In this document: one piece after another, positions 3,693 through 59,968 of the stretch
Layout: each line of letters starts with the position of its first letter
Position numbering within the stretch: position 1 is the stretch's first letter
IMG/VR virus record: IMGVR_UViG_3300020473_000011
Location: 124,001-188,000 of that record
Direction: 5' to 3' (one strand)
DNA: 64,000 nucleotides
Position numbers and translations under genes: made by a program
The notes under the pieces: generated by a model
Database searches by the model: none
What the model was told of the DNA's origin: nothing
What the model saw: only the letters and a program-made list of their open reading frames with translations

Positions 3693-3824
3693 ATCAAAAA
3701 GTAATTAGGAGTTGCTAGTATTGTACAAGAGTTTGTGTGGGAGTGCTACTATGTCTGTTCTGATTAAGTCTGTGTGCCCCGCGTCTGGCTGGCGGGGCTG
3801 GTGGACTGGGTCACGTCTGCTTGG

Positions 3825-4235
3825 TTAATTGTATATCGGTGACAGGTACTCGCGTATGTGACGTATACAGTCGGCGCGTAGTTCCCGCTGCTTACCCTCA
3901 TACAAGCCCTCCCCCGTTGATGGGACAGGATTTAGAAAACTACCACTGTAATGCTGCCATGTTGCAAAGATATGGCGTCTGTGTGCCTTATGCACGGTAC
4001 TGATGAAACCTGTCTCACCGCAAATGTTACGTACGTCTGACATGTCACCTGTACCCTCGGCGCGGTTAAGTAACACTTGTAGATTTAGGTCAAGCTTGCG
4101 TAACTTCTTGTGACATGACCTGTGGGTGCAGTTTGGTTCAAAGCATACAAAGCAAAGTGGGTCTTTCGTCAACGCGAGGATTTGGTCATCAGTCATGGTG
4201 GCCATGTTATCAGTGTCTCTTTTACTACTATTCAA
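3825..4235 (-). CDS. Hypothetical Cys/His-containing protein
   Basis: CFVC...C.H..C motif; likely start at MATMTD. Confidence 0.6.
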   Translation of the reverse strand: MNSSKRDTDNMATMTDDQILALTKDPLCFVCFEPNCTHRSCHKKLRKLDLNLQVLLNRAEGTGDMSDVRNICGETGFISTVHKAHRRHIFATWQHYSGSFLNPVPSTGEGLYEGKQRELRADCIRHIREYLSPIYN

Positions 4236-4275
4236 TAAAAATCATTGTACAATGATTTGGTTATAGTGTCTACAG

Positions 4276-4904
4276 AAAACGACTGCACCCGAGTGGTTTA
4301 CAGCTAGATCTAGTTTAGACGCGCATGACCCTGATCAACCCCGTACTGCCCTGCCAACGTCGCTGGTAAAAGAGAAAGAAAAGGAAGATAAGGAAAAGGC
4401 GCAGGGGTGTCCTCAAAAAGACGACTGCATAAAAGACGACTGCACGGGTGAGGCTCCGCGAACTGTGTTCCTTTAGTGGGTCGAGTGTTGTACAATGCAA
4501 TCTGACTTTTGTTATGAGACCTAGAGAGAGCAAGACTATGAGTACATTAAGCGCACATCAACTTTTAGAAGACCACGGCCTTACGGCTGAGCAGTTACTA
4601 GAAACAGGTAGCAGCCAGCAAAAGTTGATTGACCACTATACGAAGAACCTTGAAAAGGTGCTAAAGAGTCACGGTGCCACTAGCGATTACTTCACTAACG
4701 CCTTCTTTATGCTACAGGGTGTGAACATGGGCTTGAGTGTAGGCGAAGCTGCACGTTGGACAACCGATGAACTTGAGCGTCTTCACGACATCAAAATCGA
4801 CAACGCGTAATACCACCCTTCCCTAAAGATAGACCTTATCTAAAGGCAGTGCACTACTGGGCTGCCTTCTTTCCAAAAGACGACTGCATAAATGACGACT
4901 GCAC
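4276..4904 (+). repeat. Iteron-like GACGACTGCA direct repeats flanking a small gene
   Basis: AAAAGACGACTGCATAAA(A/T)GACGACTGCAC at 4416-4445 and 4875-4904; partial copy at 4276-4288; inverted partial copy at 5832-5843. Confidence 0.8.
4538..4810 (+). CDS. Hypothetical protein
   Basis: MSTLSAHQLLEDHG... with a GAGAG RBS; part of track ORF 4448..4810. Confidence 0.65.
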   Translation: MSTLSAHQLLEDHGLTAEQLLETGSSQQKLIDHYTKNLEKVLKSHGATSDYFTNAFFMLQGVNMGLSVGEAARWTTDELERLHDIKIDNA

Positions 4905-5161: not shown

Positions 5162-5680
5162 CTAGCGTGCCAGTCCGTATACAAAAGCTGACCACCACAG
5201 GGCTGAGGCTAGTACAACGATTAGGTGTGGCTTAGCGGTGACCGCAGGCGTGTGCTGGGTGACCTTGGGGTCAGGCTCTTTTCCCATGTACTGGTCAAGC
5301 GCGCATGTACAACGCTTATACCATGTGCAGGTTTTGTTATGATGTACGTACATCAGTTTCTCAGGGCTGTTCCGCGTCAGCTCGTCCAGAATGACCTTAC
5401 CGAAGATAGACATTACCTGTCCCCTTGTTATTTGGCGGTTAATTGCGTCGGATGTCTTGCTATTAATTGTACAACGTAATTGGAGTAAATACACATTTAC
5501 TTCATTCACTGCGCCCGTATTTAAAGGGCTGTAGCGGTTCCTACTTTTTGTAAATGAAGCGAACACTTCCATACCACAGTCATAGGTAAGAGTCTCCCAC
5601 CAGCGAGCGCCTAAACCACTGCGGTGCAGGTGCTTTGCATAATTATTCATGCCGTATTCACCCCTAAAATAGCCCTGCAT
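5162..5680 (-). CDS. Hypothetical protein
   Basis: 172-aa ORF with a hydrophobic C-terminus. Confidence 0.55.
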   Translation of the reverse strand: MQGYFRGEYGMNNYAKHLHRSGLGARWWETLTYDCGMEVFASFTKSRNRYSPLNTGAVNEVNVYLLQLRCTINSKTSDAINRQITRGQVMSIFGKVILDELTRNSPEKLMYVHHNKTCTWYKRCTCALDQYMGKEPDPKVTQHTPAVTAKPHLIVVLASALWWSAFVYGLAR

Positions 5681-5910
5681 ATTTATTCAAATCGTTGTAC
5701 AAGACTTAGTGAATAGCTATTCACCTGTGGATAACTGGGGCGCAGCGCTTTTTGCTGTCGACAATACTGACCCACCTCCACATCAATCATTGTACAACAC
5801 TTCAATGGTGCAGACTTCTGTCCCCAGCCTATTTATGCAGTCGAGTGAATAGGACTTATCCACAGAAATCCGAGTGAATAACACCGATAAATAAGAGTGA
5901 ATAAAACGCC
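5681..5910. other. Candidate plasmid-type replication origin
   Basis: Perfect DnaA boxes TGTGGATAA 5726-5734 and TTATCCACA 5856-5864; (G)AGTGAATA repeats at 5708, 5843, 5872, 5895; lies where gene orientation diverges. Confidence 0.55.
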
Positions 5911-8246: not shown

Positions 8247-8327
8247 CACCCGCCGTGGCCTTGTACTCTATTGTGGTCAGTTGTACAATCAACTGACCCT
8301 AAACACTACTATAGAGACTGAGATACA

Positions 8328-8699: not shown

Positions 8700-8841
8700 A
8701 ACCTGCACCCCAGCCGTTTAGCTACAATTTGGGCTTGCCCGAATTGTACAACGGTGTATACTCTTAGCCCATTAGAATAGAAGCCTACCGCCTGATGTAC
8801 TCGTAGGCTTCCTTGCCGTAAAGACAACTAAGGGCTATTAC

Positions 8842-10131: not shown

Positions 10132-10280
10132 TCCAGATAATTACTCTAACCACCTTCCACCAGCCCTTTGCGGGACTATTACCCTGTCCCGCAGACTATT
10201 ACATCTAATAGCTGTTGAAATCGTTGTACAACGCTGCTAGTATGCAATTCATTACTTACTAAGACCGATAAGCGCACACA

Positions 10281-12625: not shown

Positions 12626-13001
12626 AGCCCATCATAATCGCACTATCTTTATTTTGCAACATCATTCGGGACGCATACGGCTAAATTTTTTATAAATTAG
12701 TTGAACACTAACTAGGCAAAAAATCGAGAAAGCCGCAGACCCAAAGTGCCCAATGGTGCGTGTAAACCCCTGTCCTGCAACGAATTTAATCTGCAAAAAG
12801 CTTTCGTTGTACAATGGTTGTGGTATAATGGTTTTACTGTTTAGGCAGGAGGTGGCAGCCCTCTCAAGCTGTAGTTCGAGACTTTGAAAACGGGTAAGTA
12901 CCTGCTCGCGGAAGCAACACAATTTTTAGCGTTCCACCTGCTTTTAGAGTCGAACAAACGCTAACCGTGACAGTGAAAACCCATAGCAAAAGGATTCAAC
13001 T

Positions 13002-20223: not shown

Positions 20224-20235
20224 AGGCCAGCTCGT

Positions 20236-20773: not shown

Positions 20774-20802
20774 TTGTACAATGATTTTTAGTGCGCTATA
20801 GT
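20774..20802 (+). promoter_or_regulatory. Sigma70-like promoter TTGTAC-N17-TATAGT
   Basis: The -35 lies inside the ATCGTTGTACAATGAT palindrome; same geometry at 21804, 22197 and 29316 (-). Confidence 0.75.
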
Positions 20803-21803: not shown

Positions 21804-21832
21804 TTGTACAATGATTGTGTTTCAGCTATAGT
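21804..21832 (+). promoter_or_regulatory. Sigma70-like promoter TTGTAC-N17-TATAGT
   Basis: Read directly from the sequence. Confidence 0.75.
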
Positions 21833-22196: not shown

Positions 22197-22225
22197 TTGT
22201 ACAATGATTTATAAGCTGGTATAGT
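22197..22225 (+). promoter_or_regulatory. Sigma70-like promoter TTGTAC-N17-TATAGT
   Basis: Read directly from the sequence. Confidence 0.75.
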
Positions 22226-34213: not shown

Positions 34214-34415
34214 AGCGATGTCTTATCGGTTTTTCTAAGTACGGGTAAAAAGAGTGATTGTACAACCAATTTGGGCAAATGGTATTAAACCAACCAGTTG
34301 TACAATCACTTAAATAAGATGAGCGCCACCCTTGTTTATCCAGTAGGGAACAAACAATGGTTTGGTTCTGGTTGGGAACTATGTCTCATCTTATCCCTAA
34401 GTATCTCTCGGTGTC

Positions 34416-38835: not shown

Positions 38836-39024
38836 AACCGTGCTCCTTCCGTTAGTCTCATATCACAACCCTAACGTTGTACAACGATTCTAAACTCCTG
38901 CGGCGCAGGTGTCAACGACGAATTTTAAAAATTATCACAAAGCATGCTTAAACGCTGATATACTGAACAGGCTGTATAGAGACAGCACTAGAAAAACATT
39001 AATTGAGACTAAAGAGGTACCCTT

Positions 39025-42197: not shown

Positions 42198-42426
42198 CGT
42201 CTCATCCTCTATGTATACATAATTAATAGTTTAGCTATAACTAAATGGGTCGCGTTTATCTGTGTTTCCGCTTCCCGTTCGCGGCCTGCTTAAACGTTGT
42301 ACAAGCCGAGAATTACTAGGTAATTCAGTGTTTATACTATCGCATAAACTCGCCTTGGTTGGAAGCATTGTACAATAAAAAAATGTAAAAATATACGGTG
42401 TACAATGCCCCTCAATGGTGCGTGTT

Positions 42427-43529: not shown

Positions 43530-44222
43530 TCACAAATGTGCCTCGGGTAGATGGCTGCGCAACTGTGTGCGCAAGCCTTCGGGTACGTGGCAATCAGTGT
43601 AGCTTTTCACTTTCCAAGTAGCCTCTTGTGAAGCTCCTTGCGTACTCTTGTACAAACGTACTCGTTCGCCTAAGAGGTCTTTACCCTGTTGATTGTACAC
43701 GTCACAAACGTAATCATCGACAGAAATAAAGGATGTCTTTTTAGGATTATACAATAAGTCATCCACCTCATGTAGCGCGAACAACGTATGCTGCATAAAC
43801 GACAATAGCCTCTCAGCCAACTGTGAGTATACAACGCCTACATCCTGATCCAATGCCAACGTGGCCACATAGGCCACATAAGCATCATGAGCAGGCTTGT
43901 AGACGCGTGCCCATAGCAATTTAACCTTACTATCCATTAGGCTATGTTGCGCAACAGCTGATTGATATTGCGCCTGCACATCCATGGTGGCCTTCACCAG
44001 CGCGGTTCGGGTCTCTTCGTCAAACGTACCACTCGTACTTAGCTGCTTCTCAATTGTAAGCAGCCAAGTGAACCAATGCTCATAAAGGTTTAGTAAGATC
44101 TCTTGACTAGTCGCTTGGAAAGGAAAGTCTGCTCGCATTGTTTGGTTCAATGCGAACGTCTGATTTGCCTTAAAAGCTTCTAACCACTTGCTTGTAGTTA
44201 GGCTAAACGCGATCTTATCCAT
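43530..44222 (-). CDS. Hypothetical protein
   Basis: 230 aa, AAGGAG RBS. Confidence 0.7.
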   Translation of the reverse strand: MDKIAFSLTTSKWLEAFKANQTFALNQTMRADFPFQATSQEILLNLYEHWFTWLLTIEKQLSTSGTFDEETRTALVKATMDVQAQYQSAVAQHSLMDSKVKLLWARVYKPAHDAYVAYVATLALDQDVGVVYSQLAERLLSFMQHTLFALHEVDDLLYNPKKTSFISVDDYVCDVYNQQGKDLLGERVRLYKSTQGASQEATWKVKSYTDCHVPEGLRTQLRSHLPEAHL

Positions 44223-48500: not shown

Positions 48501-48806
48501 CTACTGCTTGTTTAAAAGTTTTTGCTGACGCTCAAAGCGACGTTTGGCTTGTTTAAGCACAGGGTCTTCGGCCTGCATCTTTAGCAGCTTGGCATAGTCA
48601 ATCTTGCCCTCACCCAAGATAAGGCGCTCAAGACGCTCGTAGAAGCGTTTAAGGAAGGTGATAGCCTCAGATAAGTCTGAGGAAGATACGTTACCCGCAA
48701 TGATGGCCGCTTGTACTTCTTCTAGGGCTTCATCTAATGCGCGTAGGACATCTTCTTTTGTTCGTAAACCTGTAATTGGCTTACGGTAAAAATCGAAAGT
48801 AATCAT
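48501..48806 (-). CDS. Hypothetical protein
   Basis: 101-aa ORF in the operon. Confidence 0.6.
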   Translation of the reverse strand: MITFDFYRKPITGLRTKEDVLRALDEALEEVQAAIIAGNVSSSDLSEAITFLKRFYERLERLILGEGKIDYAKLLKMQAEDPVLKQAKRRFERQQKLLNKQ

Positions 48807-48903
48807 TGTACAACTGCCTCAGTAGTCTCATAAAAAGAAAGGGGCGGGCACCTTCGCACCTGCCCCTCGCTAGATAGCTTACGCTAGGCTACTAACCCAA
48901 GGC

Positions 48904-51204
48904 TTACGCCGTAGGATCAGTAAACTGACGGATAGCATCAACTGACACTTTAACGTTTGCCGCAGCTGATAACGTTACTGTGATTTCGTTGTTGCTCTCT
49001 TCCGTTACAAGCGCCAAGTCATTGTAGAACTTGCCGTCTTCACGCTGGATCCAAACTGTGATGTCCACAATCGGCGCATCTAGGTTGTGCTGGATGCTGT
49101 GCACAAGCGATTCGCCTGCTGATACATACGAGAACTTGTTCGCGTTAAGCTGTGACACAACGTTAGATGTGTCTGTCGCCGCTTTAACAAGACCTGCGTT
49201 TAGTGCCGCATCCAAGTCAACCACAGCACCAAAGATGCTTGCTGAATCCTGTAGGTACGTTGTTGCACTTGTGTCAGGCATAGCGCCTGTTACAAGTAGA
49301 CCTGCACCTGCTCGGATAGCCGTATCTTCTGACGCACGGTCTGAGATTTCTTGAGCTAGACCATCAGCTACTACTTTAAGCTGCGTATCTAAGATCATAT
49401 CAGCGTCTTTCAATGACGTTGCTGTGTTAACGTAGTTCGCTTCTGGTACAGCTACAAACGTGCCATCTTCTTCAAGACCTGCACCCGTCTGAGTTGTATT
49501 AAGCTCATTTTGAAGAGCTGTGTCAGCATCACCACGTGCTGTTACTTCGGCAGTCAGGCCATCAGCCACAGCTTTTAGCTCGGCATCTAGCTTCACGGTA
49601 GAACCATGGATAGATGTTTCAGCCGCAATGTAGTTTGCACCTGTCGCTGGAACGTAGTTACCTGCGGTATCAACACCAACACCAGCTTGCGTCAGGTCTA
49701 ACTCAGACTGTAGATTACTTGACGCGTTCAGTACTTCGTCTGCTACGCGTAGACCGTCGGCGGTCTTAACAAGCGTTGTACCATCAATCTTCACTTCAAG
49801 CTTAGAAGCAGCCGTCGTAGAAGCTGTCATACCATCTTCTGTAGTAAATAGACCCGCGCCGAAGTCAATACCGATCTCATCTTCTGGTGTCTCAACAATA
49901 CCTGCACCGAAGTTTAGGAATAGTTCGTTACCTTGTTTTGAGATACCAGCGCCTGCGATAACTTGACCTGCACCCGAGAACTGCTCGAAGTTAAGTTCTG
50001 ACACGCCGACCTCTACAAGGCCATCGGTGATCAGTACATAACCGTTGTTCTCCGTTACCGTACCTTCTTCAACAAACGTAAAGAAGCCACTAGTTACTTC
50101 AACATCTTCGTTTGCATCTTCTGAGCGCTCCCACGCGCCTTCGGCAGCAATGTAGATACCATTTTCAGCTGGGTTAGTCTGACCCATTAACAATACGCGG
50201 TCGCCTGCAACGGTCTGAACGTCATCTACGATAAGTAGGCCACTAGTCACAATGTCGATGTTGTCTAGTGCACCAACACGTACCGACTTCTTAACGTCAA
50301 GACCTGTCGCTACTGAGTCAACGTATGCCTTGTTAGTTAAGTCATCAGCTTCCTGTGGCGCATAAGAAGACTTAACGGCGTTATCACCCATGTTCAGGTT
50401 ACCCGTCATCGTATCGCCAGCTTTGTTCACGCGCTCAGCTACGGCTGCGTCATTGGCTGTCTTGTACGACGCTAGGGCATCACCAACTTTCTTTACTTCT
50501 GCATCTAGCAGCGTATCGGCAGCTTTCAAGCTGGCAGTTTCACCTGCGCTTGTGAAGTCCGCCGTTTTAAGGAAGTTTGAGGCTTCATTAGGCGCATAGG
50601 CACCTGAGGCTTCAAGACCTGCTGCGGCCTGCGTCGCATCTAGTTCGTCTTGAATACTCTGTGATGACACTGAACTTGCTTCGGCATTGGCGTCGATTTG
50701 TGCAACCATCGCGTCTAATGACGATTTTAGTGTACCTGCTGCTAAAGTGAAGAAACCTTTCTCACCTGTAGCGCCTTCGTAACCGATTGCGTTAGCGCCT
50801 TTACCAGCCGCAGTATCAGCTAAGTCGGCTGTAGCCTTCTTCTCTGCATCAATGGCTTGTACAAGTGCATCAAGTGCTACGTCAAGCGTACCAGCTGCAA
50901 CCGTAAACGAACCGTTAGCGCCTGCGGCACCGTCGTAGCCAACTTTCTTAGCACCCGAAGCATCGGCTTCTGTAGAGGCAAGCTCTACTAGGAACGCTGC
51001 GAACTCTTCGCCTGTTTGGAAAGTCAGTGTCTGCTGAGCACCACCGCTGTCTGTGACAGACATGCGATATACTTTGTCGGTACCGTTATACCAAATGCGG
51101 CCTTCATCTGGTGCAATTGGGTCGGCATTTAGGTTTTCGATAACTAGGTTTTCAAACGCGGCATTCGCTGCCAGCGTAATACCGTGATAAATTGGATATG
51201 TCAT
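48904..51204 (-). CDS. Ala-rich fibre protein with internal repeats
   Basis: Repeats ELD.TQ.GAGL...G.Y...NY...TS...AD..LD..LK; NKAYVD; GDRVLL.GQT...ENGIY domain; C-terminal HNL module. Confidence 0.8.
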   Translation of the reverse strand: MTYPIYHGITLAANAAFENLVIENLNADPIAPDEGRIWYNGTDKVYRMSVTDSGGAQQTLTFQTGEEFAAFLVELASTEADASGAKKVGYDGAAGANGSFTVAAGTLDVALDALVQAIDAEKKATADLADTAAGKGANAIGYEGATGEKGFFTLAAGTLKSSLDAMVAQIDANAEASSVSSQSIQDELDATQAAAGLEASGAYAPNEASNFLKTADFTSAGETASLKAADTLLDAEVKKVGDALASYKTANDAAVAERVNKAGDTMTGNLNMGDNAVKSSYAPQEADDLTNKAYVDSVATGLDVKKSVRVGALDNIDIVTSGLLIVDDVQTVAGDRVLLMGQTNPAENGIYIAAEGAWERSEDANEDVEVTSGFFTFVEEGTVTENNGYVLITDGLVEVGVSELNFEQFSGAGQVIAGAGISKQGNELFLNFGAGIVETPEDEIGIDFGAGLFTTEDGMTASTTAASKLEVKIDGTTLVKTADGLRVADEVLNASSNLQSELDLTQAGVGVDTAGNYVPATGANYIAAETSIHGSTVKLDAELKAVADGLTAEVTARGDADTALQNELNTTQTGAGLEEDGTFVAVPEANYVNTATSLKDADMILDTQLKVVADGLAQEISDRASEDTAIRAGAGLLVTGAMPDTSATTYLQDSASIFGAVVDLDAALNAGLVKAATDTSNVVSQLNANKFSYVSAGESLVHSIQHNLDAPIVDITVWIQREDGKFYNDLALVTEESNNEITVTLSAAANVKVSVDAIRQFTDPTA

Positions 51205-51230: not shown

Positions 51231-53486
51231 TTAAATGTGAAACTCAACGTCAACCCACCCAGTCATTGCCTCGGTGAGCGTAACCACAAAACTCGTCTCA
51301 TTGACCACTTCGATTGAAGCGTACATAGGTCTACCCGAACTATTGTACAATCTTTCATTAAATGGTGCACCTATAAATTCGTGCTCCACCACCCAAACTT
51401 GCTGGGGTGTCTCAAAGTAGTAGCGTCTATAGACCGACGGTCTCGCTTCGCCAAATCGCTCAGTAAGCTGCTGGTCTACCATATCAGGTAGTGAAGCTGT
51501 CATTTGCAGATTTACGACGTTAGGTATTGTGTTATTCACTAACGCGTCAAGTTCTGGCTGTAGTGCTTCTTGCACCGTATTTTCTACTAGGCTAGGTAGC
51601 ACCGTTTCTAGCTGGTCTGCGACCTGCTGCTCGACAATTGGCGGTATAATTGCGTTAGCTGTGCTCTCGACCTCAGACCCTATCATAGGCAAGATCGTAC
51701 CGTTTAGCGCCTCAGTAATAAGAGTATCAGCCCGTGCATCAACCCGTGTCTCGATAGCCGCAGTAATAAAGCCGTCCTCTGCAAGGGCTATCTGTAAATT
51801 CGTGAATACCTGCTCTTGTACGGCCTCGGGTAGTACTGCATCAAGTACCTGTGCTATCTCACTCGGTAGTAGTGCTGGTAATTGCAGCTGTAGCTCGGCT
51901 GATACAGCCTCAGCTAGGTTCTCTAACAGTACGCCTTGCGCTAAGCTTGGAAAGGCTTCGCTGATGGTTGTCTCAACGGCCTCTTGAAGCTTACCGTTAA
52001 TGAGTTCCCATATTTCCTCGGCAGTCATGCTGCCACTTTCGAGGTCAAGCCCTGCCAGCGCTGCTGAGATAAGGCCGTTTGCCTGAGTCTCACTCAGACC
52101 CGACACGAGTCTCCAAATGTTATCCTCAGTGAGCACTGATGCTAGTTCAGTAGCGACGACCTCTGATGACTGTAGCCCTGACACTTCCTGTATAATTGGC
52201 CAGATAGTTTCCGCGTTGAGATAACCCTCGACGATGCTAGTTGCTTGATTACCCGCAGGGTCTCGCAACAGTGGCCAAAGCGTCTCCGCTGTGAGGTTAG
52301 CCTGCATTTCAGCTTGAACTGCATTTGGTACGACCGCGTCGACGTAGCCGCTCACAACCTCGTCGAGCGTTAAGTCAAGGTGTGCCTTAACCGCCGATGG
52401 AATTTGCAACGACACCTCGTCTCTTACAAAGACAGGCAGATCCGTCGCTAGCTTTTCAGCGACGGATTGGTCAATCTCGCTTTCTAAAGACGCAAGAATT
52501 GTTTCGCTGCTACTAGTGATCCCTTCCTGAATCGCATTAGGTAACTGCTCGGCAATCTTCGATTCAACAATAGGCGTCGCATACGTATTAATCGCCTCTG
52601 GCAGAATTGACTCAAGGGCTGTTTCAATAAGGCTCGGTAAACTACTGTCAATAAGTGCTACGACTTCGTCAGGCGTTAGCGACTGGTCGGCCGCAAGCGC
52701 CTCAGCTATACGTGCCTCAAACTCTGAGCGTAAGTCGTTCTGCAATGTCGTTAGTAAAGGCGTAACAATGCCTTGTGTGCGCTCATCAAAAAATGGGTAG
52801 ACGTTGCTCGTCATGTAGCCTTCGATGGCTACAGGTAAGCGTGCGTCAATAAGGCTATTGACCTGTTCTTCTGATAAGCCTGAGCCACCTTCACCGCCTG
52901 TGCCACTCCCTGTCGCAGCCGCGATACGGCGGTCTACTTCTGGGAAGATTGTACTTAGCGAATAATCATCCAAGATAGAAGGAAGCACGTCATTTAGTAC
53001 GACAGGTATTGCATCGGGAAGCTGTATGCTTATTTCGCTGGCTACGATTTCTTTTGTAGTGTTTGTTACGTAATCAACAGCAAAGTAAAGGTTTTGGTCT
53101 ACGTAGTCTTTAACGTCACCAATTGATACGGCGGTTCGTAGTTGAACTTGGTCAGGCCACGTTGCAAGGTCGTCAATATCCCATAGCGATAGAGACTCAC
53201 CTAGGTAGGGGTTATTTTCAAAGTACGTGCGCACATCACTCATAAAGGTGACAGTGCTATTGAACTCTACATTGTTTCCTTGTGCGAAGATTTGAGCGAC
53301 ATAGTCACCTACATAAGAGACGACTGTGCCCGCGTTAACCGCGCGCAAGGCTTGTTCTGATGCAGTAATGTCAACACTGTATTCAAGGATGACATTAGAA
53401 TCAAAAGTAAAGTAGTGCTCGCCGCTCCATTCATAATCGGAAAAGCTATCTACATCACTTCCTGATCCATAATCTAAACTTGCCAT
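51231..53486 (-). CDS. Very acidic helical-repeat virion protein
   Basis: Repeated LP..V/I...V/I motifs; C-terminal W.VEH module shared with neighbouring genes. Confidence 0.75.
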   Translation of the reverse strand: MASLDYGSGSDVDSFSDYEWSGEHYFTFDSNVILEYSVDITASEQALRAVNAGTVVSYVGDYVAQIFAQGNNVEFNSTVTFMSDVRTYFENNPYLGESLSLWDIDDLATWPDQVQLRTAVSIGDVKDYVDQNLYFAVDYVTNTTKEIVASEISIQLPDAIPVVLNDVLPSILDDYSLSTIFPEVDRRIAAATGSGTGGEGGSGLSEEQVNSLIDARLPVAIEGYMTSNVYPFFDERTQGIVTPLLTTLQNDLRSEFEARIAEALAADQSLTPDEVVALIDSSLPSLIETALESILPEAINTYATPIVESKIAEQLPNAIQEGITSSSETILASLESEIDQSVAEKLATDLPVFVRDEVSLQIPSAVKAHLDLTLDEVVSGYVDAVVPNAVQAEMQANLTAETLWPLLRDPAGNQATSIVEGYLNAETIWPIIQEVSGLQSSEVVATELASVLTEDNIWRLVSGLSETQANGLISAALAGLDLESGSMTAEEIWELINGKLQEAVETTISEAFPSLAQGVLLENLAEAVSAELQLQLPALLPSEIAQVLDAVLPEAVQEQVFTNLQIALAEDGFITAAIETRVDARADTLITEALNGTILPMIGSEVESTANAIIPPIVEQQVADQLETVLPSLVENTVQEALQPELDALVNNTIPNVVNLQMTASLPDMVDQQLTERFGEARPSVYRRYYFETPQQVWVVEHEFIGAPFNERLYNSSGRPMYASIEVVNETSFVVTLTEAMTGWVDVEFHI

Positions 53487-53917: not shown

Positions 53918-54550
53918 CTATTTGTACAAGATGTAGATCCCATACAAGTTTCTTTTCGTGCTGCCTGCCACTGCACCTGCATTGACAGGAAGGGTTAGTC
54001 TAAGCTGTATCTTTGAGAACCCATCGGATGCGCGTATTTCTGTGTCAGCATCAATGCTGTACCACGTATCTTCATCGTTAATGCGGACTTCGATAACCAT
54101 GTCTTCGTAGTTAGGGATGGTCGACACCCAAAAACGTCTAGGCATTCTATCTTTATAGTATCGGCTAGATACTGCTAAGCGTCGTGTGACTAGCTTTGCT
54201 AGCCCGTTGGACGTATCAAACTCTGCATTATAGGGTTCGAGTGTACAATTCTCTGAGCTTTCCATATCGATCAGTTGCAGCTCGTCAAACTTTATGAGTT
54301 CCAGTAACGGCAAACCCGACACGAGCGAAACGTAGGTCGAGTAGCTGTACACCAGATAAGGTACCAATAGTAGATCACGGTCGCGCATTGCTTTTTTCAG
54401 CAAGGCTTCGTCCACCATTGGGATCCCGTTAAAACGCAAAGTATTGTTCGCGTCGGAGTCCAGACTATCAAGCACGCGTTGGTTCGGATGACGATGGTCA
54501 CGGCTACCCGTTTTAGACGGTATAACAACGGTTTTTCTGCTTACAGTCAT
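53918..54550 (-). CDS. Putative structural protein
   Basis: HRHPNQRVLDSL motif; C-terminus similar to that of 54719..55585. Confidence 0.65.
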   Translation of the reverse strand: MTVSRKTVVIPSKTGSRDHRHPNQRVLDSLDSDANNTLRFNGIPMVDEALLKKAMRDRDLLLVPYLVYSYSTYVSLVSGLPLLELIKFDELQLIDMESSENCTLEPYNAEFDTSNGLAKLVTRRLAVSSRYYKDRMPRRFWVSTIPNYEDMVIEVRINDEDTWYSIDADTEIRASDGFSKIQLRLTLPVNAGAVAGSTKRNLYGIYILYK

Positions 54551-54718
54551 GTCTCATTACTCTCGATGTCTCAGTTCTTTTGTACAATGTCTACAGCGTT
54601 GGACTGCCCTATAACAGCGGTTAGTCCCGAACTAGTAAAAACTCTACTCGTTCTATTGTACAACGATTGCGTTAAGCTAAGCTACCGAATATCGGCCGCA
54701 AGTTGCAAAAAACGCACT

Positions 54719-56112: not shown

Positions 56113-59100
56113 TTAGTACGCCATCGCTCTTAGGTTAGCTACGACTGGACGGTGAAGCGCCGAGCCTGACAGTACAAGCATGATTCGAGTCTTGTCGTCA
56201 TTAAAGTCTGACGCTTTGTACTCGTACTCGTATAAGTCAGTGTCTAGCTGTGACTTCTCAGGGTTAATCATTTCAACCCATTGAGAACTACCGCTTGACT
56301 CGTCTTGGTAGTAAACCGAGACGGCTGCTTCGCCTTTCAGTTCTGCTTCAAACTTAACTGAAAGCGTACTTGGGTCGTCGCCTGCGCGGAAACTACGCGT
56401 ACAGTACACGGCTTTCCCTGCTTGCGATCCCAGCATCATTAGAAGCTCTGGCCACATCAGCGGCGTTAGATGCTTCGTACCTGTCAGCTTGGCTTTAACC
56501 GCGATAGAACCTGACACCTCTTCGTTAAGACGTAGTGGGGTGTTTTCGTTCATATCATAGTTACGACCATCCTCATCGGTGAACGTAATTGTGATGTTGC
56601 TGTCCTGTGACGGACGCATCGTACCACCTACTACCATGGCATCTGATAGCTTGTTCACGTTGAAGCTGCCTAGCGGGATCTCACGCTCAGTGTTCACGAA
56701 CTCAGCACGTAGTAAGCGGAACGTTAAGTCTGCTGACTGGTGCGGTGTCCACGTTGTCGCATTCGAAGACGAAAGCATTACACCGATTTGGTAAGCCTGC
56801 GCACTGATCACCTGACCGTCTTCTGATACACCACCTAGTTCAGCGATGGCCATTTCGTGGTCTGGGTCATCTGTAAGTACTACGAACGCATACTCAGTAC
56901 CTGCTTCAATGAATGTTGGGTCAAACGTAATACGCGTCCAACCGTGCTTAGCAGGGTTTGCGTATGACTCTGGCTTACCATCAATCACAGGGTCTTGAAT
57001 GTGGTGCGTATTCGTATCATAAAGCAGTAGGTCTTGCGGGTTAACGCGTACTTCTGCAATCGTCTTATCAGGAATACCTACTGATGTCGTACGTAATTGA
57101 ACAACGATTTGGTCGCTACCAATTGTCGTCATCTTAATGTCTACGCCTGACATGTAGTGGTCTTCTTTCAGCGTGAATGTCTGTGCTAGTGGATCCCAGC
57201 GCTGGAAGCCACCTGAGAACTTAGTTTGCCATTCTTCTGTCGTAACCGTACCTTTGCCTGTGAAGCTTGCTTGAGCCTCTGTGCCAAGCGTACCTTTCAC
57301 ATCAACTAGCTTACGGCCAGCTGTGAACGTGTTACCTTCAATTGAAATCTTACCTTTGATTACACCGTTGTTGTCAGCAACAACTGGGTTACCATCAACT
57401 TCAAGTACAGGCATTGTAACTTCGTCAAACGTTAAGCTTTGGATTTGCTCAGTCGGGCGGAAGCCTTCAATTGTGAACTCGATGTCCAGTGCACGAAGGA
57501 ACTCTAGTGCGCGCGTTGTCTCACCCACTTTAGCCGAACTTACGTTACCTTGGAATTTAAAGCCGTATACGCCGTGGTTCACAACTGTTGAGTTGATTGA
57601 GCCACCTGACTTCAAGTTCATCTTAGTTTCTGTCCAAACGTCAACCGCTGGCACCAGTGTCATTTTAGCTGGGATTGGCTTAAATGCCGCATAAGGGTTC
57701 ACCTTCATTGAGCCTGTCATTTCTGTTTGCTCAACTGGGTTACCAGCATCAATTAGTACCGTGTGCTCATATTCAAGCGTCCAAGGTTTTGTTTCCTTGG
57801 TTGGGTTCAAGCCGTTCGGGTTCATGTCGATAGGCAAGATAAGCTCTTCACGGGCAGGGTTGATTGTTGCACGAGCATCAATGTCACCATCTTGGCCAAT
57901 GATTAAGTTTTCCATACCTAAGTCACGCATGTCGTCGTCAAGCATTGGGTCTACGAATAAGCCATGCGTAGCACTTGGTGCATTACGAGAGGTGTCACTC
58001 TTTAAGCGCTCTAATGCGACTAAGTCATACAAGTCTGAGATACTGCGCTGCATCTTGTTCAGGTCTTGCATCTTAACAACTTTTACGCCGTCAAGTTTAA
58101 GCTCTGGGTCTTCCCACCACGTATGATAGATTTCAGCCAGTGATAATGCTTTGTTTGGTAGTGTTGGCGCTCTAGGTGGCGCAAAAGCACTCGCCATACC
58201 ACGCGCAAGCGTAAGCTGACCTTCTGGGTTTAAGTACAGACGGTCAATACGCGGCATACGCCAGCGGTAGTCAACAGAGATATATAGTTGGTCACCTGCA
58301 ATCTCGTCTACTTCTGCAAGCTCAACAGGTTGGCCATTCGGGCTATCAACAGGCACGATGTTAGCTGGAATGTCGAAACCTTTACGGTCACCCGTCGCTG
58401 TCACAAATGAGGTAATGTCCGTGTAGTAGATAAACTCCACGAAGAACGTACCACCCTTGCCAGGTCCCTCACTAAGCCAGTAAATAACAGACTCATTGGT
58501 GCCGCCGTTACCGTATTCCCAGTCAATACCTTTCTGGTATTCAGTGCCTGCGCCATTATGAACACGCGTGATAGCTTGAACCGACGTAACACCTACAGGG
58601 TTCTCATTGATGTCACCTAAGTCACCCACGTTACGACGTGATAGCTGGTGATTTGTCACCTTCGCAGGTGCAATAACTTCAATGATTTCCTCAACAGGTC
58701 CAAAATCAAGTGCCACCGTCATCGTGCTGTCAGCACGCGGTACAAAGCCCACAGGCTCAGCATTTGTCTGGTATGTTGTAGCTGCATTCATGTACTCACG
58801 ACGTAAGTCGTGCAGTAGGTCAATCTCACGGCCACCAACGTGTGCACGGCCTGATGAAATCGAGTAAGTCGTCGTGTCTTTGGTATCGTCCCACGTGAAG
58901 TTATCAAGACGTACATCTAAGCCGTTTACAGCATAGTTACCGTGTGCGTCTACATCATAGCGAACGATTGTACCGATAAGCTCTTGGGCTTCGTCAGACA
59001 GTAGTGCTTCTTCTTCAAGTACAGCACCTTCTGAGATCTTATACACCTCATAGAAAGTACCTTTCGCGTCAGGGTCATACGACGTGCCCCACTTAGCGAC

Positions 59101-59871
59101 TGCGTCAGGTGATGTTAGGTCTTGGTCACCACCAACCTCTGCACCTGAGTTATCTACCCATACACCGAAGCTGATCACACCCGATGCCGACCCCATTAGT
59201 TGTGGTGACTCAGGCACGTAGATAACAGCACCATTTACATACATGGCGGCAGCTTCTGCGCGGATAGTAATGTCACCACCGACAGGTGTTGACGTGTAAA
59301 GTGAACCGCCTGATAGTAACTGGCCGTTACGTAGTAACGCGTTACCTAGACCCTTAACCCATTGAGAAACTGCTTTAAGCAGCTTAGGGTGGGCATCAGC
59401 ATCCATATTATGCTCGTCGATGTCGACTGAGTCTTCGTACTGGAATACAAACAAGTCACTGATGTTAATGTTCGTTAGCGTCACGATTAGACGAAGCGAG
59501 ATCGAGCCATCGAAGTAGTACGTTAGTGCCTGTGACGGCTGACCTAGCGCAAGTAGGAACTCTTGCGGCACTTCTTCGCTAGACTCACCGAATAGGTAAA
59601 TCTCACCGATTTCTTTATCTTCATTTGTAGCGTTCGGCGGAATATTACAGATAAACTCAATTGAGTTATCTGATATTACCCGACGTGACGTGACAGGTGC
59701 TTCAAACCATAGGTTGCCCACTGAGTCAGTGTCACGGCTTGGTGATAGCGAACCTTTGTTTGTGGAAATCGCAAACTTAGTAGGGTAGATGTTCCAACCT
59801 TCTTTGTTCGCAGCATTGATGGTCTTACTCAGACCCTCATTTGTTATGACTCCAATTACGGCCATGCTCAT
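56113..59871 (-). CDS. Large baseplate/tail-associated protein, DUF4815-like
   Basis: GLFVDPMLDD, VNPYAAF, DPLAQTF, GVMLSSSNATTWTPHQSADLTFRL motifs. Confidence 0.85.
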   Translation of the reverse strand: MSMAVIGVITNEGLSKTINAANKEGWNIYPTKFAISTNKGSLSPSRDTDSVGNLWFEAPVTSRRVISDNSIEFICNIPPNATNEDKEIGEIYLFGESSEEVPQEFLLALGQPSQALTYYFDGSISLRLIVTLTNINISDLFVFQYEDSVDIDEHNMDADAHPKLLKAVSQWVKGLGNALLRNGQLLSGGSLYTSTPVGGDITIRAEAAAMYVNGAVIYVPESPQLMGSASGVISFGVWVDNSGAEVGGDQDLTSPDAVAKWGTSYDPDAKGTFYEVYKISEGAVLEEEALLSDEAQELIGTIVRYDVDAHGNYAVNGLDVRLDNFTWDDTKDTTTYSISSGRAHVGGREIDLLHDLRREYMNAATTYQTNAEPVGFVPRADSTMTVALDFGPVEEIIEVIAPAKVTNHQLSRRNVGDLGDINENPVGVTSVQAITRVHNGAGTEYQKGIDWEYGNGGTNESVIYWLSEGPGKGGTFFVEFIYYTDITSFVTATGDRKGFDIPANIVPVDSPNGQPVELAEVDEIAGDQLYISVDYRWRMPRIDRLYLNPEGQLTLARGMASAFAPPRAPTLPNKALSLAEIYHTWWEDPELKLDGVKVVKMQDLNKMQRSISDLYDLVALERLKSDTSRNAPSATHGLFVDPMLDDDMRDLGMENLIIGQDGDIDARATINPAREELILPIDMNPNGLNPTKETKPWTLEYEHTVLIDAGNPVEQTEMTGSMKVNPYAAFKPIPAKMTLVPAVDVWTETKMNLKSGGSINSTVVNHGVYGFKFQGNVSSAKVGETTRALEFLRALDIEFTIEGFRPTEQIQSLTFDEVTMPVLEVDGNPVVADNNGVIKGKISIEGNTFTAGRKLVDVKGTLGTEAQASFTGKGTVTTEEWQTKFSGGFQRWDPLAQTFTLKEDHYMSGVDIKMTTIGSDQIVVQLRTTSVGIPDKTIAEVRVNPQDLLLYDTNTHHIQDPVIDGKPESYANPAKHGWTRITFDPTFIEAGTEYAFVVLTDDPDHEMAIAELGGVSEDGQVISAQAYQIGVMLSSSNATTWTPHQSADLTFRLLRAEFVNTEREIPLGSFNVNKLSDAMVVGGTMRPSQDSNITITFTDEDGRNYDMNENTPLRLNEEVSGSIAVKAKLTGTKHLTPLMWPELLMMLGSQAGKAVYCTRSFRAGDDPSTLSVKFEAELKGEAAVSVYYQDESSGSSQWVEMINPEKSQLDTDLYEYEYKASDFNDDKTRIMLVLSGSALHRPVVANLRAMAY

Positions 59872-59968
59872 TCCTCTGCTATTTCAAGCGTTGCACTTGA
59901 GTTGTACAACGCATATCAATGTCTCAATACTTTATTAAGTATACAGTATCGTTCTAATCGTTGTACAA

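What the first reader, a model, noticed from the sequence alone, without database searches (positions are those of the whole stretch)
3721..59968. Window-wide TTGTACAA palindrome regulon overlapping promoters
Seen: about 35 copies by eye, against roughly 1-2 expected for an 8-mer. Most are intergenic and often extend to ATCGTTGTACAA(T/C)GAT: 3721, 4245, 4488, 5695, 5790, 8281, 8744, 10224, 12807, 20774, 21804, 22197, 24843, 25227, 26094, 26596, 28396, 29309, 33562, 34258, 34298, 35651, 38877, 42297, 42368, 48806, 54580, 54656, 59902, 59961. It serves as the -35 (TTGTAC-N17-TATAGT at 20774, 21804, 22197, 29316-), sits in the spacer (8744, 10224, 12807), or supplies a TACAAT -10. Inference: the varying position favours an operator for a master repressor, like the dispersed C1 operators of P1, over a phage-specific promoter element.
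Basis: partly seen in the sequence, partly recalled or inferred. Interest (0 to 1): 0.75.

Follow-up and report, generated by a model that had tools for sequence, protein, structure and literature searches.

The report
Genome-wide palindromic operator in jumbo phage
An 8-base palindrome, TTGTACAA, sits in front of most genes of an uncultured giant marine phage and its relatives, and is most likely the docking site of one phage-made regulator that controls nearly the whole genome.

Summary
TTGTACAA occurs 36 times in the window against 1.9 expected, and 149 times in the 281.6-kb virus record, where it ties as the commonest 8-mer. It is the invariant core of an 18-bp dyad, AAATCR-TTGTACAA-YGATT. 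The flanks stay mirror-symmetric even when sites are oriented by transcription.

About 62% of sites lie in the 11% of the genome that is intergenic. Sites are nearly absent between convergent genes, and 118 of 149 lie within 200 nt upstream of a start codon.

The motif is clade-specific. Three relatives carry it, two of them in Pseudoalteromonas assemblies. It sits at orthologous positions despite about 70% DNA identity (Fisher p = 8e-11), and the host chromosome lacks it.

It overlaps sigma-70-type promoters in several registers: spacer, -35 and -10. No phage RNA polymerase or sigma factor was found.

Best reading: an operator network for a phage-encoded dimeric regulator, probably a repressor. 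The binding protein was not identified and the sign of regulation is inferred, not shown. An activator or dual switch of the Mot-box or phi29 p4 kind remains a serious rival.

The parts
3721..3728 (.). TTGTACAA site, core only
   Evidence: Intergenic, 40 nt upstream of the (-) gene 3246-3680.
4245..4252 (.). Site with the full palindrome AAATCA-TTGTACAA-TGATTT
   Evidence: Intergenic, 39 nt upstream of the (-) gene 3825-4205.
4488..4495 (.). Site in a divergent promoter region
   Evidence: It lies at the start of the (-) ORF 4310-4495 and 42 nt upstream of the (+) gene 4538-4810.
5467..5474 (.).
   Evidence: Function uncertain.
5695..5702 (.). Site in a divergent spacer, left half-flank AAATCG
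   Evidence: 44 nt upstream of the (-) gene 5162-5650.
5790..5797 (.). Site inside the doubtful small ORF 5709-5852
   Evidence: 139 nt upstream of the (-) gene 5162-5650, with GCACCATTGA next to it on the minus strand.
8281..8288 (.). Core-only site
   Evidence: Intergenic, 39 nt upstream of the (+) gene 8328-8699.
8744..8751 (+). Class A site: motif inside the spacer of TTGCCC-N16-TATACT (8735-8762)
   Evidence: 90 nt upstream of the (+) gene 8842-9522.
10224..10231 (+). Class A site: motif inside the spacer of TTGAAA-N17-TAGTAT (10215-10243)
   Evidence: 49 nt upstream of the (+) gene 10281-10847.
12807..12814 (+). Site in the spacer upstream of the extended -10 TGgTATAAT (12821-12829)
   Evidence: Read directly from the sequence. 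It lies inside a doubtful (-) ORF.
20774..20781 (+). Class B site: full palindrome in the -35 position, TTGTAC-N17-TATAGT (-10 at 20797-20802)
   Evidence: 67 nt upstream of the gene 20849-21493, with a terminator-like hairpin just upstream.
21804..21811 (+). Class B site: TTGTAC-N17-TATAGT (-10 at 21827-21832)
   Evidence: A metatranscriptome contig runs 21835-22066: it starts 3 nt after the -10 hexamer and ends where the terminator-like hairpin seen begins.
22197..22204 (+). Class B site: TTGTAC-N17-TATAGT with a TGn extension (-10 at 22220-22225)
   Evidence: 60 nt upstream of the gene 22265-22633.
24843..24850 (.). Site inside the small ORF 24821-25009
   Evidence: It lies at the edge of the region rich in the second palindrome family.
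25227..25234 (.). Site in the long non-coding stretch 25010-25703
26094..26101 (.). Site in the non-coding stretch 25851-26772
26596..26603 (.). Site in the non-coding stretch 25851-26772
28396..28403 (.). Site 88 nt upstream of the (-) gene 28074-28307
   Evidence: It lies in the 3' part of the (-) ORF 28351-28842; flanks match 3 of 4 on each side.
29309..29316 (-). Class B site on the minus strand (TTGTAC-N17-TATAGT)
   Evidence: It lies near the called start of the (-) ORF 28870-29340.
33562..33569 (.). Site 76 nt upstream of the (-) gene 33285-33485
   Evidence: Flanks match 3 of 4 on each side.
34258..34265 (.). Proximal member of a pair spaced 40 bp
   Evidence: 95 nt upstream of the (-) gene 33809-34162.
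34298..34305 (.). Distal member of the pair
   Evidence: 135 nt upstream of the (-) gene 33809-34162.
35651..35658 (.). Site in the divergent spacer between the C5 DNA methylase (-) and PAS-GGDEF (+) genes
   Evidence: 149 nt and 176 nt from the two start codons.
38877..38884 (.). Site in a divergent spacer, flanks ACG/CGAT
   Evidence: 41 nt upstream of the (-) gene 38491-38835 and 140 nt upstream of the (+) gene 39025-39534.
42297..42304 (.). Proximal member of a pair spaced 71 bp
   Evidence: 99 nt upstream of the (-) gene 41805-42197.
42368..42375 (.). Distal member of the pair
   Evidence: 170 nt upstream of the (-) gene 41805-42197.
42920..42927 (.).
   Evidence: Function uncertain.
43648..43655 (.). 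Site inside the (-) gene 43530-44222
   Evidence: 180 nt upstream of the next (-) gene's start; poor flanks.
48806..48813 (.). Site overlapping the start codon of the (-) gene 48501-48806
   Evidence: the minus strand reads CAG-TTGTACAA-TG. Left flank is TAATCA.
50857..50864 (.). Site deep inside the (-) gene 48904-51204, no flank match
   Evidence: The best candidate for one of the 1-2 chance copies expected.
51343..51350 (.). Site in the 3' end of the (-) gene 51231-53486
   Evidence: 138 nt upstream of the start of the (-) gene 48904-51204.
53922..53929 (.). Site at the 3' end of the (-) gene 53918-54550
   Evidence: 112 nt upstream of the 69-aa gene 53600-53809.
54580..54587 (.). Proximal member of a pair spaced 76 bp
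   Evidence: 29 nt upstream of the (-) gene 53918-54550. Degenerate (TTGTACGA) in the relative.
54656..54663 (.). Distal member of the pair
   Evidence: 105 nt upstream of the (-) gene 53918-54550. Conserved in the P. umbrosa contig at 103 nt.
59902..59909 (.). Proximal member of a pair spaced 59 bp, before the DUF4815 gene 56113-59865
   Evidence: 36 nt upstream of the start; conserved at 37 nt in the relative.
59961..59968 (.). Distal member of the pair
   Evidence: 95 nt upstream of the start, conserved at 96 nt in the relative. A conserved GATACTGTATACT lies downstream.

Best explanation
What it is. TTGTACAA is the invariant centre of an 18-bp dyad-symmetric protein-binding site, consensus AAATCR-TTGTACAA-YGATT. 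It marks most transcription units of an uncultured jumbo myophage lineage associated with Pseudoalteromonas. The record here is 281.6 kb and estimated 67% complete.

What binds it. The site is read by a phage-encoded, two-fold-symmetric (dimeric) DNA-binding regulator, not by RNA polymerase itself.

How it works. The phage appears to use host sigma-70 RNA polymerase. The site lies on or inside the core promoter in several registers:
- in the 17-nt spacer of near-consensus early promoters;
- in place of the -35 in TGnTATAGT promoters;
- over the -10;
- as pairs 22-76 bp apart before late operons.
Occupancy would therefore block polymerase. One protein could then silence or shut down early, replication, tRNA and structural genes together. 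Accessory and maintenance genes (hipA, toxin-antitoxin cassettes, the recombinase-like gene) lack the site and would escape.

Shown versus inferred. Shown: existence, symmetry, promoter association, conservation, restriction to the phage, and overlap with sigma-70-like elements. Inferred: that a phage protein binds, that it represses, and that this serves persistence or lysogeny rather than temporal shut-off.

Confidence. The 0.5 given here is for the full repressor statement. The weaker claim, that this is the operator of a phage-encoded symmetric regulator of either sign, I put at about 0.8.
For: - Enrichment. 36 copies against 1.9 expected in the window. 149 genome-wide, tied as the commonest 8-mer.
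- Strict core. Near-matches with one core change are mostly genic, so they look like noise.
- Placement. 92 of 149 sites lie in the 11% of the genome that is intergenic. A site is present in 48 of 81 co-directional and 17 of 26 divergent spacers of at least 100 nt, but in only 2 of 31 convergent spacers. 118 of 149 lie within 200 nt upstream of a start codon, against 28% of random positions.
- Symmetry. In 65 sites oriented by transcription, five flank positions on each side are non-random (p from 1e-6 to 1e-14). The two sides are mirror images (chi-square p 0.36-0.98). This holds in both the late and the early subsets.
- Registers. -10-like hexamers are enriched at +13 and +23. This gives two coherent promoter classes, A and B; 8 of 11 class B promoters carry a TGn extension. 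Other registers are also seen.
- Conservation. There are 102 copies on the 202.6-kb P. umbrosa contig at about 65-74% DNA identity. There are 9 per 22 kb in both the 400-kb ENA contig and the P. citrea contig, and none in relatives with 43-48% sheath identity. Orthologous upstream regions agree: both have a site in 21 cases, one only in 7 and 6, neither in 67 (Fisher p = 8e-11). Distances to ATG and pair spacings are conserved.
- Phage-restricted. 33 of 35 YRTTGTACAAYR in the 6.2-Mb host assembly lie on the phage contig.
- No own polymerase. No RNA polymerase beta, sigma-70 region 2 or T7-type polymerase was detected. The part of the P. umbrosa contig that has no counterpart in this record encodes replication genes only. 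T4-type late boxes are not enriched.
- Motif-less promoters. Strong sigma-70-like promoters without the motif precede hipA, an HTH gene and the integrase-like gene. Toxin-antitoxin insertions in the relative also lack it.
Against: - No binding protein was identified. The seven HTH_3 genes of the record have no orthologue in the relative that shares the motif.
- Only about 25-30 of the 149 sites sit in a recognisable sigma-70 promoter. Generic promoter matches are no more frequent than in shuffled sequence.
- In many promoters, notably in the relative at offsets +17/18, the motif stands where a -35 is missing. Activators use that geometry too.
- Late operons show no other recognisable promoter, so the motif could itself be needed for initiation there.
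- Eight contiguous invariant base pairs are unusual for a classical HTH dimer.
- Temperate status is unproven. The recombinase hit is below the Pfam cut-off, and jumbo virulent phages often persist in isolates.
- Metatranscriptome contigs cover two of the three class B sites. That could be read-through or DNA carry-over, so it gives no clear transcription-start evidence.
Confidence: 0.5

Rival explanations
1. Activator site or dual switch. A dimeric phage protein binds the palindrome and recruits or re-targets host RNA polymerase at promoters that lack a -35. This would work like the T4 MotA box at -30, the Mu Mor/C or P2 Ogr dyads, or phi29 p4. The same protein may at the same time shut off early promoters where the site lies in the spacer.
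For: - Class B promoters have the palindrome exactly where the -35 should be, centred near -31.5, with a uniform 57-67 nt to the ATG.
- In the relative the commonest register is +17/18 with no -35 hexamer.
- Late operons have no other conserved promoter-like element and no TATAAATA enrichment.
- The phage has T4-like morphogenesis genes: the baseplate family in this clade, the prohead protease on the P. umbrosa contig, and a Gp23-type capsid protein only in a distant relative.
- Stem-loop plus promoter cassettes resemble the PeSL/PmSL cassettes of T4-type phages.
Against: - Class A promoters already have near-consensus -35 and -10 hexamers at a 16-17 nt spacing, with the site filling the spacer (centre about -21.5). 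A protein bound there would clash with polymerase.
- 8 of 11 class B promoters have TGn extended -10 elements and a TTG in the -35 position, so they should fire without help.
- Registers differ by 5-10 bp between promoters, unlike the fixed Mot-box spacing.
- No MotA or AsiA homologue was found. The only hint is a weak fold resemblance of a 69-aa protein (Foldseek probability about 0.3, VIA Z below 5).
Confidence: 0.27
2. The motif is itself the promoter of a phage-specific sigma factor or RNA polymerase, analogous to the strict 8-bp T4 late box TATAAATA. That enzyme would be encoded in the missing third of the genome or be too divergent to detect.
For: - The 8-bp core is strictly invariant while the flanks are weaker.
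- It is the only enriched element before late genes, at a conserved distance to the ATG.
- The record is only 67% complete.
Against: - The flanks are mirror-symmetric in unidirectional contexts, so every such promoter would fire both ways.
- The motif lies inside the spacer of complete sigma-70 promoters.
- No polymerase or sigma factor was found in this record.
- None was found among the ten large proteins tested from the part of the relative's contig that this record lacks.
- Sites are often paired at 22-76 bp.
Confidence: 0.08
3. Binding site of a host (Pseudoalteromonas) transcription factor that the phage has co-opted.
For: Palindromic operators are typical of bacterial regulators, and the phage depends on the host transcription machinery.
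Against: - In the 6.2-Mb P. umbrosa assembly only 2 of 35 extended sites lie outside the phage contig.
- The bare 8-mer is not enriched off the phage contig: 230 in the whole assembly against 147 for the reversed control, with 102 of the 230 on the phage contig.
- A host factor with no host regulon is unlikely.
Confidence: 0.04
4. Not a transcription signal at all. It could be a repeat spread by recombination cassettes, a methylation or restriction-related site (the core contains GTAC and TGTACA, and a C5 methylase is encoded), a hairpin or terminator, or a packaging or replication signal.
For: - Class A and B cassettes are near-identical repeats that could spread by recombination, as PeSLs do.
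- A C5 DNA methyltransferase lies in the window.
Against: - Core-only sites sit in otherwise diverged spacers and are conserved at orthologous positions, so selection acts on the 8-mer itself.
- The RNA hairpin is weak, from -5 to 0 kcal/mol, and sites avoid convergent spacers where terminators belong.
- Restriction-type palindromes are normally depleted rather than 20-fold enriched, and they are not promoter-bound (my own knowledge).
Confidence: 0.06

Closest known systems
Dispersed C1 operators of phage P1 (from my own knowledge)
   Same: One phage repressor acts on many operators scattered round a large genome. The operators overlap promoters of otherwise independent lytic operons. P1 is an element that persists without integrating.
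   Different: P1 operators are asymmetric 17-mers and number roughly 15-20 in 94 kb. Here the site is a perfect dyad with an 8-bp invariant core and about 150 copies in 281 kb. No C1-like gene was found, and neither a plasmid-prophage state nor repression was shown.
Stoperators of Cluster A mycobacteriophages (L5 gp71, Bxb1; PMC9283540, PMC6550527)
   Same: Tens of repressor sites are spread over the whole genome, which gives genome-wide silencing by one protein.
   Different: Stoperators are asymmetric 13-mers bound by a monomer. They are oriented with transcription and stop elongation inside transcription units. The present sites are symmetric, promoter-proximal and five times more numerous.
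T4 middle promoters (MotA box at -30 plus a sigma-70 -10) and the PeSL/PmSL cassettes of T4-type phages (PMC2839356, PMC4122927)
   Same: Class B promoters have a phage-specific box in place of the -35 at a fixed distance from a -10. Both class A and B sit in terminator-hairpin plus promoter cassettes before small ORFan genes.
   Different: The Mot box is an asymmetric 9-mer at one register, bound by monomeric MotA together with AsiA. Here the box is a dyad found in at least four registers and before all gene classes, late ones included. No MotA or AsiA was found.
phi29 p4, and SPO1 TF1 (an HU-family protein), as phage switch proteins (from my own knowledge)
   Same: A small phage DNA-binding protein represses early promoters, and p4 also activates late ones. 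An HU homologue with three motif copies upstream is encoded here.
   Different: Those systems have a handful of sites. HU-type proteins read DNA shape rather than eight contiguous bases. No link between the HU homologue and the motif was tested.

Membership tests
P1 C1-type dispersed operator network | Many operators scattered over the genome that overlap promoters of separate operons | tested here: met
   149 sites, spread evenly, promoter-proximal. A subset overlaps sigma-70-like hexamers.
P1 C1-type dispersed operator network | Asymmetric 17-bp operator consensus | tested here: not met
   The site is a dyad with mirror-symmetric flanks.
P1 C1-type dispersed operator network | A cognate repressor gene, and demonstrated repression in a prophage state | not testable with these tools
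   No binder was identified. Relatives occur in isolate assemblies, but that is not proof of lysogeny.
Cluster A mycobacteriophage stoperators | Asymmetric 13-bp site in one orientation relative to transcription, acting within transcription units | tested here: not met
   The site is symmetric, and 118 of 149 copies lie upstream of start codons.
T4-type middle promoter (Mot box) | Box at one fixed distance (centre about -30) from a sigma-70 -10 | tested here: not met
   This holds only for the 11 class B sites. Other registers are +3, +13, +17/18, -34 and -40.
T4-type middle promoter (Mot box) | MotA and AsiA homologues are encoded | tested here: inconclusive
   None was seen in about 70 proteins scanned. 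The record is 67% complete. The only hint is a weak fold hit to the MotA C-terminal domain for a 69-aa protein.
T4-type late promoter | TATAAATA enriched upstream of late genes | tested here: not met
   10 copies on both strands against about 12 expected, and not placed before structural genes.
PeSL-type promoter-terminator cassette | A stem-loop followed by a sigma-70 early promoter, repeated before small variable genes | tested here: met
   Class A and B cassettes are preceded by a GC-rich hairpin plus a T-run and followed by a shared leader box. This is seen by inspection. The cassettes lie in the 58-166 kb part that is absent from the relative.
PeSL-type promoter-terminator cassette | The cassettes mediate recombinational gene shuffling | not tested
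   No pair of near-identical genomes was available for comparison.
Intrinsic (bidirectional) terminator | A stable GC-rich hairpin with a T-run, placed at gene ends | tested here: not met
   Folding energy is -5 to 0 kcal/mol. Only 2 of 31 convergent spacers carry a site.

The most novel reading that the evidence does not exclude
A lineage of roughly 0.3-0.4-Mb jumbo phages with T4-like morphogenesis genes is held in a quiescent, carried state in Pseudoalteromonas isolates. A single master regulator does this through more than 200 palindromic operators, one at almost every promoter. The regulator would belong to a DNA-binding family not recognised by current profiles and would read eight contiguous base pairs. 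This would be the first whole-genome silencing system described for a jumbo phage, and a mechanism for the 'persistent' jumbo-phage infections now being found in isolate assemblies.
Probability: 0.3. Interest if true: 0.8.

Novelty: new variant of a known kind. Interest (0 to 1): 0.62.

Why it matters
Jumbo phages are usually regarded as strictly lytic, with transcription programmes run by their own polymerases or by cascades. Here a giant phage apparently uses host sigma-70 polymerase and carries one symmetric operator at most of its promoters. The operator is conserved across relatives that turn up inside cultured Pseudoalteromonas isolates.

If the binder is a repressor, this explains how a genome with dozens of independent strong promoters can be silenced at once. 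It also offers a concrete, testable mechanism for the persistent jumbo-phage infections recently reported in isolate collections.

If the binder is an activator or switch, this is a new, palindromic counterpart of the T4 Mot system.

Either way the motif is useful in three practical ways:
- as a promoter map for an otherwise unannotatable genome;
- as a bait for finding a new regulator family;
- as a diagnostic signature for this phage clade.

Tried and rejected
- Close relatives by DNA. Phage and plasmid collections gave no near match. IMG/VR scans with the extended motif and with a baseplate-region protein found only chance or remote hits.
- Literature on the bare motif. The search is swamped by Gateway cloning primers. 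Nothing turned up on Pseudoalteromonas jumbo phages or on DUF5659.
The proteins at 14318-14872 and 14872-15192 are sub-threshold HTH_3 matches, and 22633-22911 has no hit. None of the seven HTH_3 genes has an orthologue in the P. umbrosa contig. The one weak homologue there is an antitoxin inside an inserted toxin-antitoxin cassette.
- The DUF5659-like 69-aa protein (53600-53809), the most conserved orthologue at 95.7%. It gave a confident model (pLDDT 89) but no significant structural match: Foldseek E at least 0.39, VIA Z at most 4.6. The MotA C-terminal domain appears only among the weak hits. Homologues are widespread, including a 758-aa protein in which HMMER reports 12 matched stretches. 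There is no evidence that it binds DNA.
- The HU homologue with three sites upstream was considered but not tested. HU-type shape readout fits an invariant 8-bp core poorly.
- TACAAT as a real -10. No partner -35 is enriched, and the TG is one base out of register for an extended -10.
- Helical phasing of paired sites. Weak and not convincing: Rayleigh p 0.03-0.12, and the orthologous pairs counted are not independent.
- Transcription-start inference from public RNA runs. Only assembled contigs were available. Their ends partly coincide with breaks seen in a run of an isolate that appears to be DNA (its kind is not on record), and only one contig start (21835) is informative.
- The 400-kb ENA contig could not be searched whole.
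- No complex prediction was run, because no candidate binder justified it.

Full report
**What the window is.** The window is bases 124,001-188,000 of a single 281,557-bp IMG/VR virus record. The record is linear, estimated 67% complete by CheckV, and 47.7% G+C.

- It encodes a tail sheath, tube, T4-type baseplate proteins and two DUF4815/VrlC-like giant proteins, plus 14 tRNAs.
- Most of its proteins match no PHROG or Pfam family.
- By tail-sheath similarity the nearest relatives are three contigs in Pseudoalteromonas isolate assemblies: P. umbrosa B95 at 86% identity on a 202.6-kb contig, and P. citrea and P. sp. J010 at 69%. A 400,011-bp ENA metagenome contig is 75% identical.
- Near-identical DNA also occurs in marine metagenomes, in two marine metatranscriptomes and in runs labelled as single organisms.

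- TTGTACAA occurs 36 times in the window, against 1.86 +/- 1.24 expected. No shuffle exceeds 6.
Six copies inside called ORFs were missed.
- Across the whole record there are 149 copies, evenly spread. Counted with both strands pooled, TTGTACAA ties with the overlapping GTTGTACA as the commonest 8-mer.
- A position-weight scan adds about 35 one-mismatch candidates. These are mostly inside genes, so the 8-bp core is effectively invariant in real sites.

**Anatomy.**

- The core is flanked by a weaker dyad, giving AAATCR-TTGTACAA-YGATT.
- 20 of the 149 sites are perfect 16-mers, ATC(G/A)TTGTACAA(C/T)GAT, and 40 are near-perfect. These concentrate at 80-160 kb, among small ORFan genes. Sites before structural genes are mostly core-only and often paired.
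- The key test used 65 sites lying between co-directional genes, oriented with transcription. Five positions on each flank differ from background (p from 1e-6 to 1e-14). The upstream flank equals the complemented downstream flank (chi-square p 0.36-0.98).
- The same symmetry appears separately in the late and early subsets when this genome and the P. umbrosa contig are pooled.
- An asymmetric reader such as sigma or RNA polymerase would not impose this. A two-fold-symmetric DNA-binding protein would.

**Where the sites sit.** Gene positions come from my own crude ORF-based calls: 402 genes covering 89% of the record.

- 92 of 149 sites are fully intergenic, against 11% intergenic sequence.
- Among spacers of at least 100 nt, 48 of 81 co-directional and 17 of 26 divergent spacers carry a site. 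Only 2 of all 31 convergent spacers do.
- 118 of 149 sites lie within 200 nt upstream of a start codon, against 28% of random positions. The median distance to the ATG is 72 nt.
- Sites also precede the tRNA clusters.
- Neighbouring sites within 130 bp are 2.6 times more frequent than a Poisson model predicts. Helical phasing of these pairs is not convincing.
- The element is therefore bound to promoter regions. It is not a terminator: folding energy is -5 to 0 kcal/mol.

**Relation to sigma-70 elements.** -10-like hexamers are enriched at offsets +13 and +23 from the first T of the motif, and trivially at +3, because TTGTACAAT contains TACAAT. Two coherent architectures emerge.

- Class A reads TTGACA/TTGCAA-tca-TTGTACAA-cgat-n-TATACT. 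The palindrome fills the 16-17-nt spacer of near-consensus promoters. There are about ten copies in the 105-124 kb block of 39 small minus-strand genes, plus window sites 8744 and 10224. Site 12807 has a similar geometry: the motif lies upstream of TGgTATAAT.
- Class B reads AAAATCG-TTGTACAA-TGATTT-N9-TATAGT. TTGTAC stands in the -35 position. 8 of 11 copies have a TGn extended -10, and the distance to the ATG is a uniform 57-67 nt. Window sites 20774, 21804, 22197 and 29309 (minus strand) belong here.
- Both classes follow a GC-rich hairpin with a T-run and precede a shared leader box, CTAACCGAT(A/T)A. They thus resemble the PeSL/PmSL promoter-terminator cassettes of T4-type phages (PMC4122927).
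- Other registers occur as well. Relative to the first base of the -10 hexamer, the motif also starts 34, 40 or 62 nt upstream. In the P. umbrosa contig the commonest arrangement is a -10-like hexamer beginning 17-18 nt after the motif's first base, with no -35 hexamer.
- Only about a quarter of site-orientations have a good sigma-70 promoter within +/-70 nt. That compares with 5.5% of random 148-nt windows scored on one strand only.
- Generic consensus matches in the window are no commoner than in shuffled sequence. Promoter calls away from classes A and B are therefore soft.

**Does the phage have its own polymerase?**

- No RNA polymerase beta, sigma-70 region 2 or T7-type polymerase was detected in the record. 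The T7-type search also found nothing in its control genomes, so that one result shows little.
- The 32-105 kb part of the P. umbrosa contig has no DNA-level match in this record and may correspond to its missing part. It encodes ribonucleotide reductase, PolA, DnaB-like, SNF2 and DEAD helicases, a ligase, a processivity factor and a T4-type prohead protease, each preceded by the motif. No polymerase appeared among the ten largest proteins tested.
- The T4 late box TATAAATA is not enriched.
- Host sigma-70 polymerase is therefore the likely enzyme. TTGTACAA is the only strongly enriched upstream element apart from ribosome-binding-site-like words.

**Conservation.**

- The P. umbrosa contig is only 65-74% identical in DNA over the shared genes, with a median of 66% protein identity over 101 reciprocal-best orthologues. 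It still carries 102 copies.
- The 22-kb tail regions of the ENA contig and the P. citrea contig carry 9 copies each. Two more distant relatives (sheath 43-48% identical) carry none.
- For the 101 orthologues, presence of a site upstream agrees strongly: both 21, this record only 7, relative only 6, neither 67 (odds ratio 33, Fisher p = 8e-11).
- In alignments of spacers 26-84% identical, the 8-mer, its distance to the ATG and the pair spacings (22, 34, 44-45, 59, 76 bp) are conserved.
- The flanks drift between genomes: ATCR/YGAT here, YR/YR in P. umbrosa, TA/TT in P. citrea. The core does not change.
- In the 6.2-Mb P. umbrosa assembly, 33 of 35 YRTTGTACAAYR lie on the phage contig. The reader of the site therefore has no host regulon and is most simply phage-encoded.

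**Which protein binds?** Not identified.

None has an orthologue in the P. umbrosa contig. The single weak homologue there is an antitoxin in an inserted toxin-antitoxin cassette that itself lacks the motif.
- An HU homologue conserved between the two genomes (record coordinates 3950-4228) has three sites upstream here and two in the relative. HU-type shape readout fits eight invariant base pairs poorly.
- The most conserved orthologue is a DUF5659-like 69-aa protein at 53600-53809. It folds confidently but matches nothing solved.
- Eight contiguous palindromic base pairs suggest a beta-sheet reader of the ribbon-helix-helix kind, or some other non-classical reader. This is inference only.

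**Sign of regulation.** For repression:

- Class A promoters are complete without help, yet the site occupies their spacer.
- Class B promoters have TTG plus an extended -10.
- Sites also lie over the -10, downstream of likely starts, and in pairs.
- Strong sigma-70-like promoters without the motif precede hipA, an HTH gene and a 622-aa protein with a sub-threshold tyrosine-recombinase hit. These are the sort of genes expected to stay on in a carried state.

For activation or a dual switch:

- The site stands where a -35 is missing in many promoters.
- No alternative late promoter is visible.

The single informative RNA datum is a metatranscriptome contig at 21835-22066. It begins 3 nt after the class B -10 hexamer and ends where a terminator-like hairpin begins. 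This supports the class B promoter but does not give the sign.

Presence in isolate assemblies suggests carriage. It does not prove lysogeny, because virulent jumbo phages persist in isolates (bioRxiv 10.1101/2024.12.31.630880).

**Verdict.**

- The finding is real, genome-wide and clade-wide.
- I put about 0.8 on 'operator of a phage-encoded symmetric regulator'.
- Within that, about 0.5 overall goes to a repressor network and about 0.27 to an activator or dual switch.
- The remainder is split between a direct promoter for an unseen phage polymerase, a host factor, and non-transcriptional roles.
- It works like the dispersed operators of P1 or the stoperators of L5. It is not a member of either system, because it fails on symmetry, length, copy number and the absence of a homologous repressor. 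I rate it a new variant of a known kind.

Noticed in passing
window 24806-28353 (13 loci), plus 771-783 and 892-904: A second palindrome family, TGACC-N3-GGTCA (pattern TGACCYNRGGDCA), has 14 loci in the window against 0 expected. They cluster in a largely non-coding stretch. The whole record has 18. The P. umbrosa contig has 11, again clustered (195.9-198.2 kb). This could be an origin, a centromere or a second operator set.
   Followed up: partly
window 930-2249 (-), 2525-2890 (+), spacer 2250-2524: A HipA-like kinase (HipA_C 5e-48) faces a divergent 121-aa gene with a weak HTH_3 hit. Repeated TATCATAT(N)TGATA-type palindromes lie in the 275-nt spacer. There is no TTGTACAA here.
   Followed up: partly
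window-wide, e.g. 17682-17730: (T)GAGAC lies 10-13 nt before the start codon of 75 of the 402 called genes, as if it were an unusual ribosome-binding or leader word. The 8-nt unit AGACACTG is repeated six times directly before the ATG at 17727.
   Followed up: partly
downstream of class A/B -10 hexamers, e.g. G000 117883, 111853, 114877, 41474, 120312: A conserved leader box, CTAACCGAT(A/T)A, begins about 8-10 nt after the -10 hexamer and lies 19-35 nt before start codons. Function unknown.
   Followed up: partly
window 34416-35501 (-), 35835-36713 (+), 11150-11740 (-), 38491-38835 (-): Accessory genes: a C5 cytosine DNA methyltransferase, a PAS-GGDEF diguanylate cyclase, a GNAT acetyltransferase-like protein and a 2OG-Fe(II) oxygenase-like protein. 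Together with the thymidylate-synthase-like and long dUTPase genes elsewhere in the record, they hint at DNA modification.
   Followed up: no
window 53600-53809 (-): A DUF5659-like 69-aa protein is the most conserved orthologue between this record and the P. umbrosa contig (95.7%). Its model is confident (pLDDT 89) but has no solved structural match. Relatives are widespread in viruses.
   Followed up: yes
G000 3950-4228 (L006:3950-4228), outside the window: A phage HU/IHF-family protein (Bac_DNA_binding 6e-30) has three TTGTACAA copies upstream. It is conserved in the relative, which has two copies upstream.
   Followed up: partly
G000 6586-8454 (L006), outside the window: A 622-aa protein has a sub-threshold Phage_integrase domain (E = 1.4e-5) and is 69% identical in the P. 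umbrosa contig. It could be a recombinase, resolvase or telomere resolvase. It has no PDB sequence match.
   Followed up: partly
P. umbrosa contig G001:C26 166011-167473: Toxin-antitoxin-like cassettes are inserted between late genes: one gene with an HTH (antitoxin-like) and a pair of small genes that look like antitoxin and toxin, judged from sequence and arrangement only. The corresponding spot in this record holds two unrelated plus-strand genes. It looks like a hot spot for accessory gene insertions, and these insertions lack the motif.
   Followed up: partly
window 20000-26000: Two marine metatranscriptome runs hold patchy, 100%-identical contigs over 20740-21493, 21835-22066, 22105-22986, 23442-23594 and 24356-25134. 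This suggests the phage was transcriptionally active in that sample.
   Followed up: partly
G000-wide, e.g. window 5802 (-), 13341 (+), 29395 (-), 42412 (-): GCACCATT(GA) is one of the commonest words in the genome (AATGGTGC 49 times). The longer form CACCATTGA has 16 copies, several of them next to TTGTACAA sites. Unexplained.
   Followed up: partly
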